A stretch of 32,000 bases of DNA from Wallemia ichthyophaga EXF-994 (GCF_000400465.1 NW_008806290.1:30001-62000), one strand, 5' to 3'. Counted from the first letter of the stretch, positions 8,701 through 21,011 are shown. The notes: generated by a model not told the origin, from the sequence alone. Program-made: numbers and translations.

Positions 8701-9905
8701 CGTCGCTCTTCAACGAAGAGCTCGGTGTAGTTCTCCAAGTGCAGTCGAACAAGCTGCCTCTGCTTGCTCAAACATTCCACAAGGCCGGTTTCCCCCCAAC
8801 CGCGATCCACGCAATCGGCAGAGTCACGCCTGATAATGAAAACATCACCGTCGTGCAGCACAGCAATATCATCTACGAAAGCACCAGAGCTCAGTTACAG
8901 GAATACTGGGCAGAGACATCGTACAAGATGCAAACGATCCGTGACGACCCGGCATGCGCAGATGAGGAATACGCAACAATCAGAAAATCTGCCGTCGAGA
9001 ACCCAGGTCTGCGCTACAACCTTACTTTTGACCCAGCGCTGTCGAGATTGCCGACATCACTCACTGAGCGTCCGAGTGTAGCTATTTTGCGCGAGCAGGG
9101 AGTAAATGGACATATGGAGATGGCTTGGGCTTTTGACATGGCTGGATTTAAGGCGGTTGATGTGCACATGTCCGATATTCTCTCGGGAAGTGTCTCACTG
9201 CAAGATTTCACCGGTCTGGCTGCATGTGGTGGTTTCTCGTATGGTGATGTCCTTGGTGCTGGTTCTGGCTGGGCGAAGTCGATCCTCCTCAACCCGATAG
9301 CGAGAAAGGAGTTCAAGGAGTTCTTCCATAATGAGCGCAAATTCGCCTTGGGGGTGTGTAACGGCAATCAACTCTTCGGGTGCCTCAAGCCGATTGTACC
9401 CGGCGCAGAACACTGGCCAGAGTGGAAACCAAACCGTTCGAACCGCTTCGAGGCGCGTACGACTATGGTCGAGATCGAGAAGAACACGCAGAGCATCTTC
9501 CTCAAACCACTCGCGGGCTCGAAACTCCCTATAGCCGTCGCTCATGGTGAAGGTAGGGCTGAGTTCAGCGATAACGCTAAGGACGCACTCACCGCTGATG
9601 GGGGTGTCGCTATCAGGTATATCGACAGCGATGATAAGTGGGCTTCTACTTACCCCGCTAATCCTAACGGTTCGCCTGATGCTATCGGGGGTGTAGTCGC
9701 TGCTAATGGTCGCGTTCTCGGTCTGATGCCTCAGTGAGTAGACGCTTCTCGGCATAGCTCGCTTTTGCTAACATAATACTCAAGCCCCGAACGTAACACT
9801 ATGGCTCAGTCTAACTCGTACATTGATCCTACTCAGTCGGCCGCTTGGAAAGGCACTGGACCATGGTTCTCAATGTTCGTCGCTGCGAGACAGTGGGTCG
9901 GATGA
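5800..9905 (+). CDS. ADE6: Phosphoribosylformylglycinamidine synthase (large PurL/FGAMS), 3 exons
   Basis: FAQVNSEHCRHKIFN, KVETHNHPT, GAATGSGGEIRDE, HDVGAGG, HDRSDGGL and glutaminase motifs CGGFSYGDVLGAG and GVCNG are present. The catalytic HPE is formed across the last intron (MPH|PER). The first intron (GTGAGT near 8610) joins ORFs 5800-8670 and 8667-9737; the stop is TGA 9903-9905. Confidence 0.97.
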
Positions 9906-14488: not shown

Positions 14489-17350
14489 ATGCCACCACCA
14501 AAATCATCGCAGCTCGGAAACAAAGAAATTTCTTTGTTCAGGCAGTTACTTGTGGGTATATGGCGATTAAAGGAGTATTGGGATATTTTTAACAGCTCAA
14601 TCAAAGCAACTCCACGATGAAAGGCAATACAAGAAAGGCGTTAAAACCGCTGATTCCATCCTGAAGAAGAATCCTGAACACGGCGGTTAGTTTCTCTCTG
14701 TCTTTTTTATCTCCTTCCTCACCGATACACGACAGAAACGCTTGCAATGAAAGGGTTGATTCTTTACAATATGGGCGAGAAAGATAATGGTTTGGAATAC
14801 GTGAGAAGAGGCGTTAGATTAAGCCTCACCTCACACATCGTTTGGCATGTTTTTGGTATCATTCAGCGCCAGGAACACAAATACGAAGATGCGCTTAAAT
14901 CTTACACTCAAGCTTTGCGTCATGATTCTGAGAATGTTGCTTTGATTAGGGATGTTTGCACCCTATCCACTCACCTTCGTCAATTCCAACCTTTGGTGGA
15001 ACAACGCCTCTTCTTGCTTAAAACTCGTCCTTCTATGCGTACTCAATGGGTTAGCGCTGCTGTGGCTTTAGATTTGGCTGGTCATCACGATAAAGCGCTT
15101 AGAATCCTCTCTGACTTTGAATCTACTCTCACTGACCTTGAAAATGCTGATAGCTCTCTCAAATATGAAATGAGCGAGGTTTTCCTCTATCACATCTCTA
15201 TTCTTGAGAAATCTGGCTTGTTTCAACAGGCTATTGATCTACTTGTCGAGCGTCAACCTAATATATGTGATATCGTCGCTTGGAGAGAGTCTCACGCACG
15301 CTTCTTGACTCTCCTCAACAAACCCGATGAAGCTGCAGATGCTTGGAGACTGCTCATTCAGAGCAACCCCGAAAACAGAGCTTACTATATCGGTTTCTTC
15401 AAAACAAAAGGTATCGATTTCACTCAAAACCTCAGCGAGCAAGACAAATCTTCAGCACTCAAAACACTCACCCTCTTCCTCGAACAATTCCCAAAGGCTG
15501 GTGTTATCCAGAGACTCAGATTAGACCTCGCAACCCACAATGCTTTCAGGGATATTGCTCACGAATACCTCACCACAAGAATCACAAAGGGTGTTCCTTC
15601 TCTTTTTGTAGACATCAAAGCGCTCTATGGCGACATTGAAAAGCAGCAAATCCTCGGTGATTTGGCTGAGGGATACCGCACCGAGCTTGAGAAGTCGTGC
15701 AAGTTCACCTCTACAGATGGTGAGTTATAGCGTTTGTTCTAGCGCACAATCTAATACCAACAGACAAAATCCAGCCAACGACTTCATACATCTGGACTCT
15801 CTACTACCTCTCCCAACACTACTCGCAAATTCGCCAATATGAAAAATCACTGCAAGTAGTCAAAGTGGCTATAGAGCATACACCAACACTGCCGGAACTT
15901 TACCTCGCACAGGGCCGTACGCTGAAAAGATTGGGATGTCAATCCGAAGCCACTGAAGCAGTAGAGATAGCCAGGGAGCTCGATGGACAAGACAGATTCC
16001 TCAACTGCAAATCGGCCAAGTACATGATACGCAATGGGGAGATAGAGCAAGCGGAGCAAATCCTCAGTCTCTTTACTCGTAAAGCAGCTCCGACATCTGC
16101 GGCGGATTTGTGCGACATGGAAGCTATATGGTTCATGCGCGAAGAAGCCAAGGCGTACAGCAAAAAGGGCGAGTATGGTATGGCTCTTAAGCGCCTCCAT
16201 CAGCTTTTCGACACTTTCAATACCTGGGAAGAAGACCAGTACGATTTCCACATATACTGCTTGAGGAAATACACTATCAGATCTTATCTCACTGCTCTCG
16301 AGCTGGAGGATGAGTTGAGGGAGGATAGAAATTACGTCGATTCTGCAATCGAGGCTGCTTCAATGTATATGAAGTTACACGATGACCCACGTATAGTTGA
16401 GCAAATCACCAACCCGCAGGGTGTGTACGGGTAGCCTATGCGTGCTAGTACTGACTCAGCACAGCAGATGACCAGCAAGATAAAAAGGCGCAGAAGAAGG
16501 CCAAGAAAGATAAGGAAAAGGCAGCAGCGCAGCAAAAAGCCAAGGGGAAGGACGGTAAAGATGCAGATGGTCTGCCAGCACCCGCCGAAGACAAGGATCC
16601 ACACGGCCATGGGATCATCAAGACGGAAGAGCCACTGGAAGCTGCGGCTAGAATTCTCGCTCCACTTTCCGCCACGAAACGCAAACGTATCGATCTCCAT
16701 CACGTCCAATTCGAAGTGGCTCTGAGGAGAGCGAAGTACGCTCAGGCGATGCGCGCGCTCAACAGTACCAGAGCGCTCGACCCTCACTGTGGAATGCTTC
16801 ATGTGCAGTCGTTGAAATTGAAGCTAGCTAGTGAGCGGATACACACACATATATAAATACGCTGACACATTCGCTAGTGGATGCAGAGAAGCAGAAGGAG
16901 GAAGAGGGTGATGAGATCATGCAAGCCCTGCACGAGGCTATGCACACCCTCATCCCAGCTGACGCCAACCTTGAAAGCTGGAATGCTGACTACTTGCAGC
17001 ATCACTCCCTCCACCCTACCAGGGTACTGGGCGCTGCTGAGGCTATAATCCTCATTCGTGGTCAAGGTAGTGCAAGAGATGCAGTCAACATTGTCATGAA
17101 CGTCGGGAAAGGGAGTGTCGATGCTCAATCTCAATCTCACCCTCTCGACGTCCCCTCGGCTACTCGTATGATGCTGTTCGTCGCTCATCACCAACCCGAC
17201 CGCGTCGAAGAATTGCGCTGCCTCCTCAATACTCGCTTTCCACATCAAGACTCCTTCAAGAGTGAACAACAGCTAGCGGAGCAGAAAAAAGCTATAGAGG
17301 CATCCCGCTTGGAGAGATCCATGGCTGAAGTGGACCTGAGTGCTAAGTAA
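14489..17350 (+). CDS. NAT1: NatA N-terminal acetyltransferase auxiliary subunit (Nat1/NAA15), multi-exon
   Basis: Spliced start MPPPKSSQLGNKEISLFRQLL|QLHDERQYKKGVKTADSILKKNPEHG|ETLAMKGL, then HIVWHVFGI, GVPSLFVDIKALY, HTPTLPELY, LDGQDRFLNCKSAKY and EEDQYDFHIYCLRK, which are hallmark NAA15 TPR motifs. Stop TAA 17348-17350. Confidence 0.95.
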
Positions 17351-18184: not shown

Positions 18185-18192
18185 AAAAAAAA
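18185..18192 (-). terminator. RNA polymerase III oligo-T terminator (T8)
   Basis: Eight T on the minus strand begin 8 nt after A37 of the tRNA 5' half. Confidence 0.8.
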
Positions 18193-18199
18193 GAAGTCT

Positions 18200-18276
18200 T
18201 ACGAGTCAGGCGCTCTAACCCCTGAGCTAAAAGCGCTTTATGCGCCTTCGCGGATTTGAACCGCGGACCTCCTGAT
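18200..18276 (-). tRNA. tRNA-Thr(CGU), circularly permuted gene (3' half 18276-18241, linker TAAA 18240-18237, 5' half 18236-18200)
   Basis: Rejoining gives a 73-nt cloverleaf: GCGCTTT TA GCTC AGGGGTTA GAGC G CCTGA CTCGTA|A TCAGG AGGTC CGCGG TTCAAAT CCGCG AAGGCGC A. The acceptor stem has 7 bp (one G-U), the D stem 4 bp, the anticodon stem 5 bp and the T stem 5 bp; the anticodon is CGT. Confidence 0.93.
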
Positions 18277-18294
18277 ATCGGCTGCTGAACGTTA

Positions 18295-18345
18295 CCGTTG
18301 CGACAGGACTTCTTGACGGAGTATTACACGTAGATTAAATAATAT
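18295..18345 (-). promoter_or_regulatory. Candidate Pol III promoter elements upstream of the permuted tRNA: AT-rich/TATA-like tract 18345-18334 and A-box-like TGTCGCAACGG 18305-18295
   Basis: TGTCGCAACGG(TA) fits the A-box pattern TRGCNNARYGG at all but one position and ends about 32 nt before the B-box GGTTCAAATCC (18262-18252). ATATTATTTAAT lies further upstream. Function is inferred. Confidence 0.45.
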
Positions 18346-18577: not shown

Positions 18578-21011
18578 ATGGAATATGACTTTCAGAGCGC
18601 ATTTCAACCAGTCACGCCGCCGTATACGGATTCAAGCAGTGCTGAATTCGATGAAGCGATCTCATCTCTACTCGATCAATCGCCGAATGGCACGAGTGAA
18701 TTGGGCGAGACGGCTGAGCTACAGGGCTGGCTAGAAACACAGCCTATCTTCAACGCATACGACGATCCTCTTCAATCCCTTCAGTCCCTCCAAGCTAACC
18801 TCATCGGCAACAGTGTCGGCGTAGATCCTCGCCGGGAATTGATGCTCTCTGGTGAACAGGATTTGCAGGGTGTGCAATTTGCCTACCCTGAGCAACCTTA
18901 TCCAGAAAATCATCTTGCAGAAGATATTAAACCGAAAGCCAAGCGTAAGGCCAAGGATAAGGCTAGCGAGAATGGCACAGTCACAAAAAAGCAGAAATCA
19001 GAAGCGCAGAAGCGTGAGTGATATATGATACAAGTCCTGGACTCTGCTAACGATGATGTCAACCAAGAACGGTTCCCAAAACCACCGCAACCTGTACCGC
19101 CACCACCGCGACAAGGTGGTCCGAAGAATCCATCACACAACGCCGTAGAAAGACGCTACAGAAATAACATAAACACGCGCATGCTCGCGCTGCGATGCGC
19201 TGTACCAGCTCTGGTCGCCCAGCCCCCTCAGACGAGCTCGCGGCGTAAAGCACCCCCGCTCTACGTTGAAGGAGTAGCTGTACCTGGCAAGATCAACAAA
19301 CAGACTGTGCTCATTGGCGCCACGGAATACATACGCCGCCTTAGAGGGAGAGAACAGAGGTTGATGCGCGAGGTTGAACTGCTCAGATCCCAACTGCCAA
19401 TGGCAGAGCAGACAGCATGGGCATATAACTGGGGAGCTGTGGATGATAGAGATCTTTACGATGAGGTGGATGACTTTGATCCGCCTGATAATGCTTTCGT
19501 GGATCTGGTCGATGAGCCAGACACCAAGACTAGCACGGAAGACCTGCAGTCGCAAGAATCGCAGGAGTCACAGGATTCACAGTCTAGCGAGGGCGGAAAC
19601 GCTCCTCGCTACCTTCTCGGCATGTTCTTGTCCTTTAGTTTGCTGCAGAAACCATACACAAAGCAACAACAGTGGCAGCATCAGAATATGTTTCGTAGAA
19701 GCTTTGAAGAGGGACATGTTGTTTCGAGCAGTCTTCCATCTAGCGCAGTTGCAGGGGGAGCGGCAGATGAGATAGATTGGAAGGATCATCTAATTCCTGA
19801 TCTTCTGCATCCACATTTTCATGACATTATCCAGACAGTCCTCATCTGCTTGACGCTCTTTGTGTTGCTGTACCCTCTCTTACCTAGCTTAAAAAGAAAT
19901 CCTGTCACTCAAGCAGCTCAGATTGGCTGGATGACCATTCAGCGACTATTGAAGAGCAGTCTTGGTGTGAGCTGTGGAAAGTTCACAGAGGAAACAATTC
20001 AACGCGCTCAGAAGCAGATTTACAAGCCGAAGGGTGCGTATTGCTTTAAATACCAATCACTTCTAACCCCCGAAGACAGAACACTCAAAGATGGACAGAC
20101 TACACACACATATGCTGCTTTCGACTTCGCCCGGGATGAGGGAATCTCCAGTCGCCCTTGCTACAGCAGCCCTGCACACTAAGTCGAGCAAGCTGTGGAA
20201 AGAAGCGCAGGATATGTATTTGGAGAGTGAACCGAGATATGTCCAGTTAGCATTGGAAAGGGATATCGAAGATGCCCACCAGCTATGCACGATGGGTGCG
20301 AGTAATAAGAAAGCCGACTTGAACGTTTTGCAGAAGATCTCCAGCAGCGTCTCTGTATTAGCACTAGAAGAGCTTTGGAGTTTAATATTCACCCAAATGG
20401 TACAAGAGAAGGCATCAGTAGGGGATGTACAACTCATCAACAAAGCTGTTGGACAGTTGGTGAGCTCTACAAGAAATCTACCAACGGTTGACACTATGTC
20501 TATGTTATCTGCTGCCATGTGGGCTTTATTACAGGGCAAGAAGGAGAGTGCGTTGCGTTTGGCAGCGCAATTAAGTGGTAGAACGGCGTCTTTGAAGTGC
20601 CTGAAGGTGTTCAGAATGCTCACCAAGACTTCTGAGAATCTGGACGATGTTGATGGGAAGGATGATATGTTTGATAGTCAAATTGATGAGGAGATTGAAA
20701 GATGCGACGATTTGGCTACTATAGCCATGCTTTACTTGTCACTCAAAATGTCTTTGCCAGGCAATAAAGGGAAAGGGCAGGGTAAGGCGCTGTATAGGCT
20801 CACACTGCGATTGCGCTCTTTGCTTGGCTCACTCGATGAAAGGAAAGGGAAGCTGATTGATGACGAAACTTATGATGCTGCTGTTGATTCTTTGCAAGTA
20901 ATTGGCTACCAAGTTATAGGAATGAGAATGTCGGCAATTGGTGAGACATGTCATGGAATCGGCATTCGTAATTGGGGACATGTCACTCGCATGGATAGCC
21001 AGGATAGCTAG
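18578..21011 (+). CDS. SRE1: SREBP-type bHLH-ZIP membrane-bound transcription factor (Sre1/SrbA-like), at least 3 exons
   Basis: The basic region SHNAVERRYRNNIN has the SREBP-diagnostic Tyr, followed by KINKQTVLIGATEYIRRL and a zipper. Two hydrophobic segments (YLLGMFLSFSLL; TVLICLTLFVLLYPLL) flank a short loop. Introns lie near 19015-19068 and 20034-20080. The exact C-terminus is uncertain (possible GTGAGA donor at 20941). Confidence 0.8.

What the first reader, a model, noticed from the sequence alone, without database searches (positions are those of the whole stretch)
18185..18276. Circularly permuted tRNA-Thr(CGU) gene in a fungal genome
Seen: the minus strand reads 3' half (A38-A73, 18276-18241), then TAAA, then 5' half (G1-A37, 18236-18200), then AGACTTC and T8. 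The halves are mutually complementary (acceptor GCGCTTT/AAGGCGC; anticodon stem CCTGA/TCAGG). I see no matching 5' half upstream or 3' half downstream in the flanks, so this is not two ordinary tandem genes. After joining, the Thr features G1-C72, G35-U36, C32 and U36-A37-A38 are all present. Known: permuted tRNA genes occur in Cyanidioschyzon merolae, prasinophyte green algae, chlorarachniophyte nucleomorphs and Thermofilum pendens, and mature through end-joining to a circular intermediate. I am not aware of a report in fungi. S. cerevisiae tRNA-Thr(CGU) is single-copy and essential. Inference: this is a functional permuted gene that standard tRNA scanners would miss, and it implies a permuted-tRNA maturation route in this fungus.
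Basis: partly seen in the sequence, partly recalled or inferred. Interest (0 to 1): 0.96.

Follow-up and report, generated by a model that had tools for sequence, protein, structure and literature searches.

The report
Permuted threonine tRNA genes in Wallemia
The salt-loving fungus Wallemia ichthyophaga carries a threonine tRNA gene whose two halves are encoded in swapped order, it is conserved with matching compensatory mutations in relatives, and I found no earlier report of this gene layout outside algae and archaea.

Summary
On the minus strand, 18276-18241 encodes tRNA positions 38-73. TAAA follows, then 18236-18200 encodes positions 1-37, then AGACTTC and T8. Joined, the halves give a canonical 73-nt tRNA-Thr(CGU). 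ARAGORN and Rfam miss the native locus.

The window is Wallemia ichthyophaga EXF-994 (Basidiomycota). The unit is identical in three independent assemblies, so it is not an assembly artefact. A distant relative has the same permuted gene beside the same bHLH gene. Its acceptor pairs 3-70 and 4-69 and T-stem pair 49-65 are changed on both sides. Wallemia mellicola carries two paralogous permuted tRNA-Thr(UGU) genes. They are 73/73 identical, while the adjacent coding DNA is about 74% identical.

The W. ichthyophaga and W. mellicola genes share an 8-bp leader-trailer helix. All lineages share a T5-T8 terminator and an A-box-like element upstream of the B box.

No RNA evidence was available, and I could not check for a conventional Thr(CGU) gene elsewhere in the genome. 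One divergent strain has a C3-C70 mismatch. I found no fungal report in the searchable literature.

Verdict: a real, selected, type II (37/38) permuted tRNA gene family, and a new member of a known kind.

The parts
18241..18276 (-). 3' half of tRNA-Thr(CGU), positions 38-73: 3' strand of the anticodon stem, variable loop, T arm, 3' strand of the acceptor stem, discriminator A73
   Evidence: Identical in L009, L010, L011 and L003. L006 differs at 4 positions, each paired with a change elsewhere: three double changes plus the 5-68 one-sided change.
18252..18262 (-). B box GGTTCAAATCC (T loop, positions 52-62). In this gene it lies upstream of the true A box.
   Evidence: Read from the sequence. 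Invariant core in all Thr(CGU) copies.
18237..18240 (-). Intervening sequence TAAA joining A73 to G1. RNase P and tRNase Z would have to remove it.
   Evidence: The linker is 3-4 nt and free to vary: TAAA, TGAA, AAA, CCA, ACA.
18200..18236 (-). 5' half of tRNA-Thr(CGU), positions 1-37: 5' strand of the acceptor stem, D arm, 5' strand of the anticodon stem, C32 U33 C34 G35 U36 A37
   Evidence: L001 matches positions 10-37 plus the trailer at 40/40. It contains an internal T4 at positions 5-8.
18219..18229 (-). True A box TAGCTCAGGGG (positions 8-18), located downstream of the B box
   Evidence: Read from the sequence.
18191..18198 (-). Trailer strand GACUUCUU of the leader-trailer helix. It begins one nt after A37 and runs into the T tract.
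   Evidence: RNAduplex -10.0 kcal/mol, empirical p about 0.01. Present in the MFE fold. Covaries with the W. mellicola genes.
18185..18192 (-). T8 run, the putative RNA polymerase III terminator
   Evidence: T6 in other strains, T5 in L001, L006 and the W. mellicola genes. The conventional tRNA-Ala gene also ends with T5.
18307..18314 (-). Leader strand AAGAAGUC of the leader-trailer helix (-38 to -31 relative to the 3' half)
   Evidence: The homologous block CAAGGAATCC is invariant in four W. mellicola loci.
18295..18305 (-). A-box-like element TGTCGCAACGG in the leader, 43 nt upstream of the B box (normal spacing is about 44 nt). Inferred to be a surrogate promoter element.
   Evidence: at most 1 mismatch to a relaxed consensus, with counterparts in L006 and W. 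mellicola. Compare the real Wallemia A box TAGTGTAATGG. The consensus was relaxed after seeing the data.
18277..18294 (-). Proximal leader, removed at the 3' splice site. G at -3 (18279) could pair with C32 (anticodon-intron pair).
   Evidence: G(-3) is present in 5 of 7 distinct loci and absent in L006 and L012.
18334..18344 (-). AT-rich TATTATTTAAT at -68 to -58, a possible TATA-like element. Weak and not conserved.
   Evidence: Altered in L003 (TATTGTTTAAT), with no counterpart in L006 or W. mellicola.
14747..17350 (+). Flanking gene: NatA auxiliary subunit (contains introns). It ends about 835 nt before the T-run end of the tRNA unit (18185).
18578..21011 (+). Flanking gene: bHLH / SREBP-like protein, divergent from the tRNA gene. 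It served as the syntenic anchor in all relatives.

Best explanation
This is a genuine, selectively maintained, circularly permuted nuclear tRNA-Thr(CGU) gene of Wallemia ichthyophaga. It is type II, with the junction at 37/38, the canonical intron site. It belongs to a small family of permuted tRNA-Thr genes in Wallemia that also includes two Thr(UGU) genes in W. mellicola.

Proposed mechanism (inferred, not shown):
1. RNA polymerase III makes one transcript of about 125-140 nt: leader, 3' half, 3-4-nt linker, 5' half, short trailer, U tract. Initiation is probably directed by the B box in the 3' half together with an A-box-like element retained in the leader at normal spacing.
2. The transcript folds into a tRNA body whose acceptor stem is closed by the linker. 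Its anticodon loop is open and extended by an 8-bp leader-trailer helix, so it resembles an intron-containing pre-tRNA with a nicked intron.
3. The tRNA splicing endonuclease (Sen complex) removes leader and trailer at 37/38.
4. The tRNA ligase (Trl1) joins A37 to A38.
5. RNase P and tRNase Z remove the linker, and CCA is added.

Whether splicing comes first (circular intermediate, as in algae) or end-processing comes first (two base-paired pieces) cannot be decided from sequence.

The likely origin is tandem duplication of an intron-containing tRNA-Thr gene followed by decay of the outer halves, before the Wallemia species diverged. The leader's A-box-like element would be the remnant of the lost upstream 5' half.
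For: - Architecture and a perfect cloverleaf after joining, with G1-C72, C2-G71, C32, U33, G35, U36, A37 and A73.
- Identical unit in three independent W. ichthyophaga assemblies, with the L011 contig seen in 6 samples.
- The same permuted gene lies beside the same bHLH gene in L006, whose bHLH protein is only 48-50% identical and whose flanks cannot be aligned. The unit is 69/76 identical.
- L006 differs by 3-70 GC to AU, 4-69 CG to UA, 49-65 CG to GC and 5-68 UG to CG.
- Across five sequences the permuted cloverleaf is 97.1% paired, with 10 of 21 pairs changed on both sides. Slid controls give 30-46% paired and 0-2 such pairs.
- Two paralogous permuted Thr(UGU) genes in W. mellicola are 73/73 identical. 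The neighbouring bHLH genes are 79% identical in protein and about 74% in DNA.
- The linker varies freely while the halves do not.
- A T5-T8 run follows 6-7 nt after A37 in every copy.
- The leader-trailer helix has p of about 0.01 in W. ichthyophaga and 0.01-0.05 in W. mellicola. It is 100% paired with two double changes between the CGU and UGU genes.
- An A-box-like 11-mer lies 36-51 nt upstream of the B box in all lineages, against a background of 4.3e-4 per position.
- Wallemia also has conventional genes with 37/38 introns, so the splicing machinery is in use.
- ACG codons are used: 18 of 128 Thr codons in four window ORFs.
Against: - There are no RNA data of any kind: no transcript, junction read, circular intermediate or charged tRNA.
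- I could not scan the genome, so a conventional Thr(CGU) gene may exist elsewhere and the permuted copy could be redundant.
- Strain L003 (GCA_004918755.1) has G3 to C, creating a C3-C70 mismatch. Within W. ichthyophaga the unit (75/77) is no more conserved than its flanks (97-99%).
- The W. ichthyophaga 5' half contains an internal T4, which could be a weak polymerase III stop.
- No strict bulge-helix-bulge motif is present. The C32:G(-3) pair is missing in L006 and L012.
- The L006 leader-trailer pairing is weak (p about 0.1).
- The A-box consensus was relaxed after seeing the data.
- The identity of the W. mellicola paralogues could partly reflect gene conversion.
Confidence: 0.85

Rival explanations
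1. The locus is a non-functional relic: a rearranged tRNA pseudogene left by tandem duplication and decay. It is neither transcribed nor processed, and ACG is decoded by a conventional Thr(CGU) gene elsewhere or by Thr(UGU) wobble.
For: The C3-C70 mismatch in strain L003, and no excess conservation within W. ichthyophaga. The internal T4. The reversed A/B box order. No RNA evidence. The genome-wide tRNA set was not examined.
Against: Three pairs changed on both sides between the window and L006, while their flanks cannot be aligned. The W. mellicola paralogues are 73/73 identical in a background of about 74% identity. Terminator, leader helix and A-box-like element are conserved. Every identity and modification position is intact in all nine complete copies.
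Confidence: 0.07
2. The locus encodes a tRNA-like non-coding RNA that works in its permuted linear form, with a closed acceptor and an open anticodon region, like the tRNA-like module of Y RNA-like (YrlA) RNAs. It never becomes a decoding tRNA.
For: A weak Rfam match to YrlA (23.5 bits, E = 0.007), whose module has the same T-arm, closed stem, D-arm order. The MFE folds show a closed, stable structure with a terminal helix.
Against: The match is far below the YrlA gathering score of 69, and YrlA is bacterial. The anticodon-loop nucleotides on both sides of the break (C32 U33 N34 G35 U36 A37 | A38) and the ThrRS identity pairs are invariant. The two gene types differ precisely at position 34 (CGU versus UGU), as isoacceptors do. 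The break sits exactly at the canonical splice site.
Confidence: 0.05
3. The arrangement is an assembly or sequencing artefact, for example a collapsed tandem array of conventional intron-containing genes.
For: A Logan contig of a relative (L001, SRR25399871) breaks inside the 5' half.
Against: The same arrangement appears in the 2013 reference and in independent population assemblies of W. ichthyophaga, in an unrelated metagenome contig, and in four W. mellicola loci from different projects. The flanks run into unique protein genes. A T8 terminator immediately follows the 5' half, and no outer halves exist within 32 kb.
Confidence: 0.01

Closest known systems
Type II (junction 37/38) permuted tRNA genes of prasinophyte green algae (Ostreococcus, Micromonas) and the Bigelowiella natans nucleomorph (Maruyama et al. 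2010; reviewed in PMC3978253)
   Same: The 3' half lies upstream of the 5' half on one strand. The junction is at the canonical intron position 37/38. The intervening sequence between A73 and G1 is short (the known range is 1-74 bp). A T stretch follows downstream, and CCA is not encoded.
   Different: The host is a basidiomycete fungus, outside every lineage listed in reviews up to 2026. There is no convincing conserved TATA-like element. Instead an A-box-like element lies in the leader at normal spacing from the B box. There is no clear BHB motif, but there is an 8-bp helix between the distal leader and the trailer. The isoacceptors are Thr(CGU) and Thr(UGU). Expression has not been shown here.
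Permuted tRNA genes of Cyanidioschyzon merolae (Soma et al. 2007, 2013)
   Same: The same principle of gene permutation, and the same proposed maturation by the splicing endonuclease and ligase, then RNase P and tRNase Z, then CCA addition.
   Different: In C. merolae the junctions lie at many positions and carry BHB motifs, 11 of 43 genes are permuted, no homologues of the A/B-box-binding TFIIIC subunits have been identified, and TATA-dependent transcription is proposed. In Wallemia the known cases are all at 37/38 and, so far, only Thr. A fungus would be expected to use TFIIIC (not tested).
Permuted tRNA genes of Thermofilum pendens (Chan et al. 2011)
   Same: Circular permutation with a very short intervening sequence.
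   Different: The T. pendens junction is at 59/60, CCA is encoded, and promoter and endonuclease are archaeal.
Conventional intron-containing nuclear tRNA genes, e.g. W. mellicola tRNA-Ala(UGC) with a 35-nt intron (L013 15726-15832)
   Same: The same interruption site, the same expected enzymes (Sen endonuclease, Trl1 ligase), the same type of terminator (T5) and a similar A-box sequence.
   Different: In the permuted gene the 'intron' is open, because its two ends are the ends of the transcript. The acceptor ends are covalently joined by the linker.
Split (trans-spliced) tRNA genes of Nanoarchaeum equitans
   Same: The halves are brought together by complementary extensions next to the 37/38 junction, which is comparable to the leader-trailer helix.
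   Different: Those are two separate genes and transcripts in an archaeon. Here there is a single transcript unit in a fungus.

Membership tests
Circularly permuted tRNA gene (Soma 2007 definition) | 3' half encoded upstream of the 5' half on the same strand, separated only by a short intervening sequence joining the acceptor ends | tested here: met
   The linker is 4 nt here and 3-4 nt in relatives.
Circularly permuted tRNA gene (Soma 2007 definition) | The joined halves give a canonical cloverleaf tRNA with a coherent identity | tested here: met
   ARAGORN calls tRNA-Thr for all five joined sequences tested. 97.1% of cells are paired, with 10 pairs changed on both sides.
Circularly permuted tRNA gene (Soma 2007 definition) | No complementing outer halves nearby, so it is not simply two tandem genes | tested here: met
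   One copy of each half in 32 kb at up to 7 substitutions. The flanks are unique protein genes.
Circularly permuted tRNA gene (Soma 2007 definition) | Leader and trailer form a BHB or intron-like motif at the junction that the splicing endonuclease can recognise | tested here: inconclusive
   The junction is at the canonical 37/38 site. There is no strict hBHBh' motif. C32:G(-3) is possible in 5 of 7 distinct loci. An 8-bp distal leader-trailer helix is supported in W. ichthyophaga and W. mellicola but is weak in L006.
Circularly permuted tRNA gene (Soma 2007 definition) | Downstream T stretch and an upstream promoter | tested here: inconclusive
   T5-T8 is present in every copy, so the terminator criterion is met. 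The TATA-like element is not conserved. An A-box-like element in the leader is conserved, but it was defined post hoc.
Circularly permuted tRNA gene (Soma 2007 definition) | Expression through a circular (or otherwise rearranged) RNA intermediate to a mature CCA-tailed tRNA | not testable with these tools
   No RNA data are accessible. See the decisive next steps.
Circularly permuted tRNA gene (Soma 2007 definition) | Evolutionary maintenance (conservation or covariation in relatives) | tested here: met
tRNA-Thr identity | G1-C72, C2-G71, G35, U36 and discriminator A73, plus A37 (t6A) and C32 (m3C) contexts. The list of identity elements is from established knowledge. | tested here: met
   All are present in the CGU and UGU copies.
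Rfam tRNA (RF00005) | Score at or above gathering threshold on the genomic sequence | tested here: not met
   No hit at gathering threshold, nor at E up to 10 on the native locus. This is expected for a permuted gene.
Rfam YrlA (RF02553, Y RNA-like) | Score at or above the gathering threshold of 69 bits | tested here: not met
   23.5 bits, E = 0.007. The resemblance is only in the order of the tRNA-like arms.

The most novel reading that the evidence does not exclude
Wallemia maintains a family of circularly permuted tRNA-Thr genes that are the functional, perhaps the only, source of the CGU and UGU isoacceptors. This would be the first case in fungi or any opisthokont. In this reading they are transcribed by the ordinary TFIIIC-dependent route, because the leader keeps an A box from the lost upstream half. 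They are then matured by the ordinary ruler-type Sen endonuclease and Trl1 ligase without a BHB motif. That would mean standard eukaryotic tRNA machinery can express permuted genes, so such genes may be hidden in other 'complete' eukaryotic genomes that appear to lack an isoacceptor.
Probability: 0.5. Interest if true: 0.9.

Novelty: new member of a known kind. Interest (0 to 1): 0.82.

Why it matters
Permuted tRNA genes have been treated as an oddity of a few unicellular algae, nucleomorphs and one archaeon. Their persistence has been explained by upstream-promoter, TFIIIC-independent transcription and by BHB-recognising endonucleases (PMC3978253).

A conserved family in a culturable basidiomycete would show that the layout can arise and persist in an opisthokont with conventional tRNA genes alongside it. 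It would place the processing pathway next to the well-characterised yeast enzymes (Sen, Trl1, RNase P, Trz1, Los1). It would offer a testable promoter solution, namely an A-box relic in the leader.

It would also expose a blind spot in annotation, because ARAGORN and Rfam return nothing here. Missing isoacceptors in fungal genomes may sometimes be permuted genes.

If tRNA-Thr(CGU) is single-copy in Wallemia, as it is in S. cerevisiae, an essential decoding function would depend on this unusual route.

Tried and rejected
- Two scans of JGI metagenome contigs, with a junction-spanning pattern and then a broader T-loop-gap-D-arm pattern, found nothing. Both scans are now used.
- The Rfam 'evalue' search gave no partial tRNA hits, only weak YrlA and Plastid-ycf2 matches.
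- The sigma-70 promoter and intrinsic-terminator scan is irrelevant to a eukaryote and found nothing.
- The NatA route to relatives gave a contig (L001) that ends inside the 5' half, and another (L002) that is too short. The matching contig on the other side (L004) does not contain the 3' half.
- I looked for Thr(CGU) halves in W. mellicola near the bHLH genes at up to 9 substitutions and found none. The tRNA genes there are Thr(UGU) in the opposite orientation.
- I considered a strict archaeal-type BHB formed by positions 32-35 with the proximal leader. Only the 32:-3 pair is possible, so I rejected it.
- I considered the AT-rich block at 18334-18344 as a TATA promoter. It is not conserved, so I did not rely on it.
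- The leader sequence similarity between the CGU and UGU genes (an 8/10 block and a 7-mer) is not significant on its own by my estimate. Only its coincidence with the helix and the A-box position carries weight.
- One literature query with min_terms=2 was uninformative.

Full report
**1. The observation**

| Piece | Coordinates (minus strand) | Sequence / content |
|---|---|---|
| 3' half | 18276-18241 | ATCAGGAGGTCCGCGGTTCAAATCCGCGAAGGCGCA (tRNA positions 38-73) |
| Linker | 18240-18237 | TAAA |
| 5' half | 18236-18200 | GCGCTTTTAGCTCAGGGGTTAGAGCGCCTGACTCGTA (positions 1-37) |
| Trailer | 18199-18193 | AGACTTC |
| T run | 18192-18185 | T8 |

Joined 5' half to 3' half, the 73-mer is called tRNA-Thr(cgt) by ARAGORN. 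It has a standard cloverleaf: a 7-bp acceptor stem including U5-G68, a 4-bp D stem, a 5-bp anticodon stem, a 5-nt variable loop and a 5-bp T stem. On the native sequence ARAGORN finds no tRNA in the whole window. Rfam finds nothing at gathering threshold. A search tolerating 7 substitutions finds one copy of each half in the 32 kb, so there are no complementing outer halves.

**2. The organism**

The flanking genes are eukaryotic: a NatA auxiliary subunit with introns, a WD40 protein, a bHLH protein and a Kelch protein.
- The bHLH ORF is 96% identical to a Wallemia ichthyophaga protein.
- The window is 100% identical over 3301 nt to W. ichthyophaga EXF-994, GCA_000400465.1 KE007240.1.
- 'Fungal genome' is therefore correct: Basidiomycota, Wallemiomycetes.
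- The published annotation of this genome used tRNAscan-SE 1.23 and Rfam 10.1 (PMC3849046). I did not run tRNAscan-SE. ARAGORN and Rfam 15 both miss this gene.

**3. Not an artefact**

The 77-nt unit is identical in the EXF-994 reference and in two independent population-genomics assemblies. These are L010 (GCA_004918065.1) and L011 (GCA_004918305.1), and the L011 contig is seen in 6 samples. Only the T run differs, T8 or T6.

The most divergent strain, L003 (GCA_004918755.1, 98.5% identical over 3.3 kb), has two changes: linker TAAA to TGAA, and G3 to C in the 5' half. The second creates a C3-C70 mismatch. Within the species the unit (75/77) is no better conserved than its flanks (97-99%). 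These strains therefore say nothing about selection, and the L003 variant is a real caveat.

**4. Conservation in distant relatives**

I used the flanking genes to fetch syntenic contigs.

- **L001 (Logan SRR25399871).** Its flanking genes are about 72-75% identical in DNA. The contig ends inside the 5' half, but its last 40 nt match the window at 40/40 (18188-18227). That stretch covers tRNA positions 10-37, the AGACTTC trailer and the T run, which is T5 in L001.
- **L006 (metagenome contig ERZ27248941 k119_15675).** Its bHLH protein is only about 48-50% identical to those of W. ichthyophaga and W. mellicola. It carries the whole permuted gene in the same place and orientation, with a 3-nt linker (AAA), trailer ATCCAA and T5.

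L006 differs from the window as follows:

| Pair | Window | L006 | Type of change |
|---|---|---|---|
| 3-70 | G-C | A-U | both sides |
| 4-69 | C-G | U-A | both sides |
| 49-65 | C-G | G-C | both sides |
| 5-68 | U-G | C-G | one side |

The acceptor partners lie in different halves, 6-10 nt either side of the linker. Apart from the linker (AAA versus TAAA), every difference from the window falls in one of these four pairs. The flanks of the two loci cannot be aligned. This is the signature of selection on the assembled tRNA.

**5. A second permuted gene type**

I wrote a scanner that cuts candidate segments around B-box-like motifs and lets ARAGORN treat each as circular. It recovered the known units and the positive control. 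It also flagged a new cluster just upstream of the bHLH gene in W. mellicola.

Reading it gives, in order:
- 3' half: ATGCTGAGGTCCCAGGTTCGATCCCTGGTAGGTGCA
- Linker: CCA or ACA
- 5' half: GCACCTGTAGCACAGTGGTAGTTGCGCAGCACTTGTA
- Trailer: TGATTCC, CGGTTCC or CGATTCC
- Terminator: T5

Joined, it is tRNA-Thr(tgt), again split at 37/38.

The cluster listing shows that single W. mellicola strains carry both bHLH proteins. L007/L012 and L008/L013 are therefore two paralogous loci.
- The paralogous bHLH proteins are 79% identical, and their DNA is about 74% identical.
- The 73 tRNA nucleotides are identical in all four loci examined, including the independent CBS 633.66 reference assembly.
- The linker and trailer vary.
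- At 26% divergence, 73 unchanged positions would be expected with probability of about 3e-10 (my arithmetic). Gene conversion between tRNA copies could contribute.

On an alignment of the five units then in hand (three CGU, two UGU), the cloverleaf written in permuted order is 97.1% paired, with 10 of 21 pairs changed on both sides. Sliding the partners by 1-3 columns gives 30-46% paired and 0-2 such pairs.

**6. Flanking signals**

*(a) Terminator.* T5-T8 begins 6-7 nt after A37 in every copy. A conventional Wallemia tRNA-Ala(UGC) gene also ends in T5.

*(b) Leader-trailer helix.*
- In W. ichthyophaga the trailer GACUUCUU pairs with leader AAGAAGUC at -38 to -31. The energy is -10 kcal/mol, and only 1% of 60-nt windows from the same sequence do as well.
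- In W. mellicola, GAUUCCUU (or GGUUCCUU) pairs with AAGGAAUC, with p of about 0.01-0.05.
- Between the two gene types, two pairs of this helix change on both sides and one changes to a wobble. It is 100% paired, against 28-66% in slid controls. With only four distinct rows the shuffle control is weak (32/500).
- The helix appears in the minimum-free-energy folds of the putative transcripts.
- In L006 the pairing is weak or ambiguous, with p of about 0.1.
- The shared leader and trailer architecture suggests that the CGU and UGU genes descend from a single ancestral permuted gene.

*(c) A-box-like element.*
- In a permuted gene the real A box lies downstream of the B box. For that reason, reviews attribute the persistence of such genes to TATA-dependent, TFIIIC-independent transcription (PMC3978253).
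- Here the only TATA-like block (18334-18344) is not conserved.
- Each leader instead contains an 11-mer within one mismatch of TRGCNNARYGG, in the normal orientation and 36-51 nt upstream of the B box:

| Locus | Element | Distance to B box |
|---|---|---|
| Window | TGTCGCAACGG (18305-18295) | 43 nt |
| L006 | TGGCTTGATGG | 36 nt |
| W. mellicola | TGGTTCAAYGG | 50-51 nt |

- The background rate is 4.3e-4 per position, about 2.6% per 60-nt leader.
- I relaxed the consensus after seeing the data, so this is suggestive only. It does resemble the bona fide Wallemia A box TAGTGTAATGG.
- It fits the tandem-duplication model of origin: the leader would be the decayed upstream 5' half.

*(d) Anticodon-intron pair.* G at -3, able to pair with C32, is present in 5 of 7 distinct loci but not in L006 or L012. 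No strict bulge-helix-bulge motif can be drawn.

**7. Mechanism**

*Shown:*
- the gene architecture;
- its conservation and covariation;
- the terminator;
- the leader-trailer complementarity;
- the presence of conventional genes with 37/38 introns in the genus.

*Inferred:*
- A single polymerase III transcript.
- Folding into a tRNA body with a linker-closed acceptor stem and an open, helix-extended anticodon loop.
- Removal of leader and trailer by the Sen endonuclease, which in eukaryotes measures from the mature domain.
- Ligation of A37 to A38 by Trl1.
[quoted passage not shown] Splicing first would give a circular intermediate, as in algae. End-processing first would give two pieces held together by 7 + 5 + 8 base pairs.

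**8. Caveats**

- There is no RNA evidence.
- No genome-wide tRNA census was possible with these tools. Whether this is the only Thr(CGU) gene is unknown.
- The essentiality of the single-copy S. cerevisiae gene is background knowledge and was not tested here.
- L003 has the C3-C70 mismatch.
- The W. ichthyophaga 5' half has an internal T4.
- ACG codons are in use: 18 of 128 Thr codons in four ORFs.

**9. Comparison with known cases, and novelty**

The closest known cases are the type II permuted genes of prasinophyte algae and the B. natans nucleomorph.

Reviews from 2014 and August 2026 list permuted tRNA genes only in red and green algae, nucleomorphs and archaea. Searches for 'permuted tRNA' with fungi, for 'permuted' with Wallemia, and across all 45 papers since 2015 returned no title or abstract start pointing to a fungal case. 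I opened only two of those papers. The library lacks most subscription journals, so 'not found' is the strongest statement I can make.

I classify this as a new member of a known kind, with possibly distinctive promoter and recognition features that remain to be tested.

**10. Verdict**

Confidence is about 0.85 that this is a functional permuted tRNA gene. It is lower, about 0.5, for the specific transcription and processing details.

Noticed in passing
L007 9388-9463 (+), L012 9391-9466 (+), L008 9624-9699 (+), L013 9687-9762 (+): Wallemia mellicola has two paralogous permuted tRNA-Thr(UGU) genes. Each lies 240-540 nt upstream of one of two paralogous bHLH genes, in the opposite orientation to the W. 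ichthyophaga Thr(CGU) gene. The halves are identical in all four loci, and the linker is CCA or ACA.
   Followed up: yes
L003 5623-5699 (-), equivalent to window 18234 and 18239: Strain GCA_004918755.1 of W. ichthyophaga has G3 to C (a C3-C70 mismatch in the acceptor stem) and linker TAAA to TGAA. Three other assemblies are intact. This could be a tolerated or mildly deleterious variant, a sign of redundancy, or a sequencing error.
   Followed up: partly
window 18205-18273 (-): A weak Rfam match to the bacterial Y RNA-like family YrlA (23.5 bits against a gathering score of 69, E = 0.007). The tRNA-like module of YrlA has the same T-arm, closed stem, D-arm order as a permuted tRNA. I read it as structural mimicry, not membership.
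   Followed up: partly
L013 15726-15832 (+): A conventional W. mellicola tRNA-Ala(UGC) gene with a 35-nt intron at the canonical site, A box TAGTGTAATGG and a T5 terminator. It was the only conventional tRNA gene in about 170 kb of Wallemia-related sequence fetched.
   Followed up: partly
L013 13250-13894 (-): A reverse-transcriptase (RVT_1) ORF lies just downstream of the paralogous bHLH gene. A retroelement sits next to the duplicated tRNA-bHLH module. This may bear on how the module was duplicated, or on reverse-transcription models for the origin of permuted genes.
   Followed up: no
L001 12910-12949 and L004 1-950: In Logan run SRR25399871 (an unidentified relative) the assembly breaks inside the 5' half of the tRNA, and the neighbouring contig does not contain the 3' half. 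This may reflect a repeated k-mer (another copy of this tRNA sequence in that genome) or heterogeneity.
   Followed up: no
L012 about 8805-8911 and 9017-9125: A direct repeat of about 110 nt (about 84% identical), with copies roughly 210 nt apart, lies upstream of the W. mellicola Thr(UGU) gene. It showed up as secondary BLAST hits.
   Followed up: no
window 18578-21011 (+); P0013 and P0014: The neighbouring bHLH gene is annotated as sterol regulatory element-binding protein 1 in EXF-994. In the W. mellicola strains checked it is present as two copies (79% identical), and only one copy (P0021) turned up for W. ichthyophaga EXF-994.
   Followed up: partly
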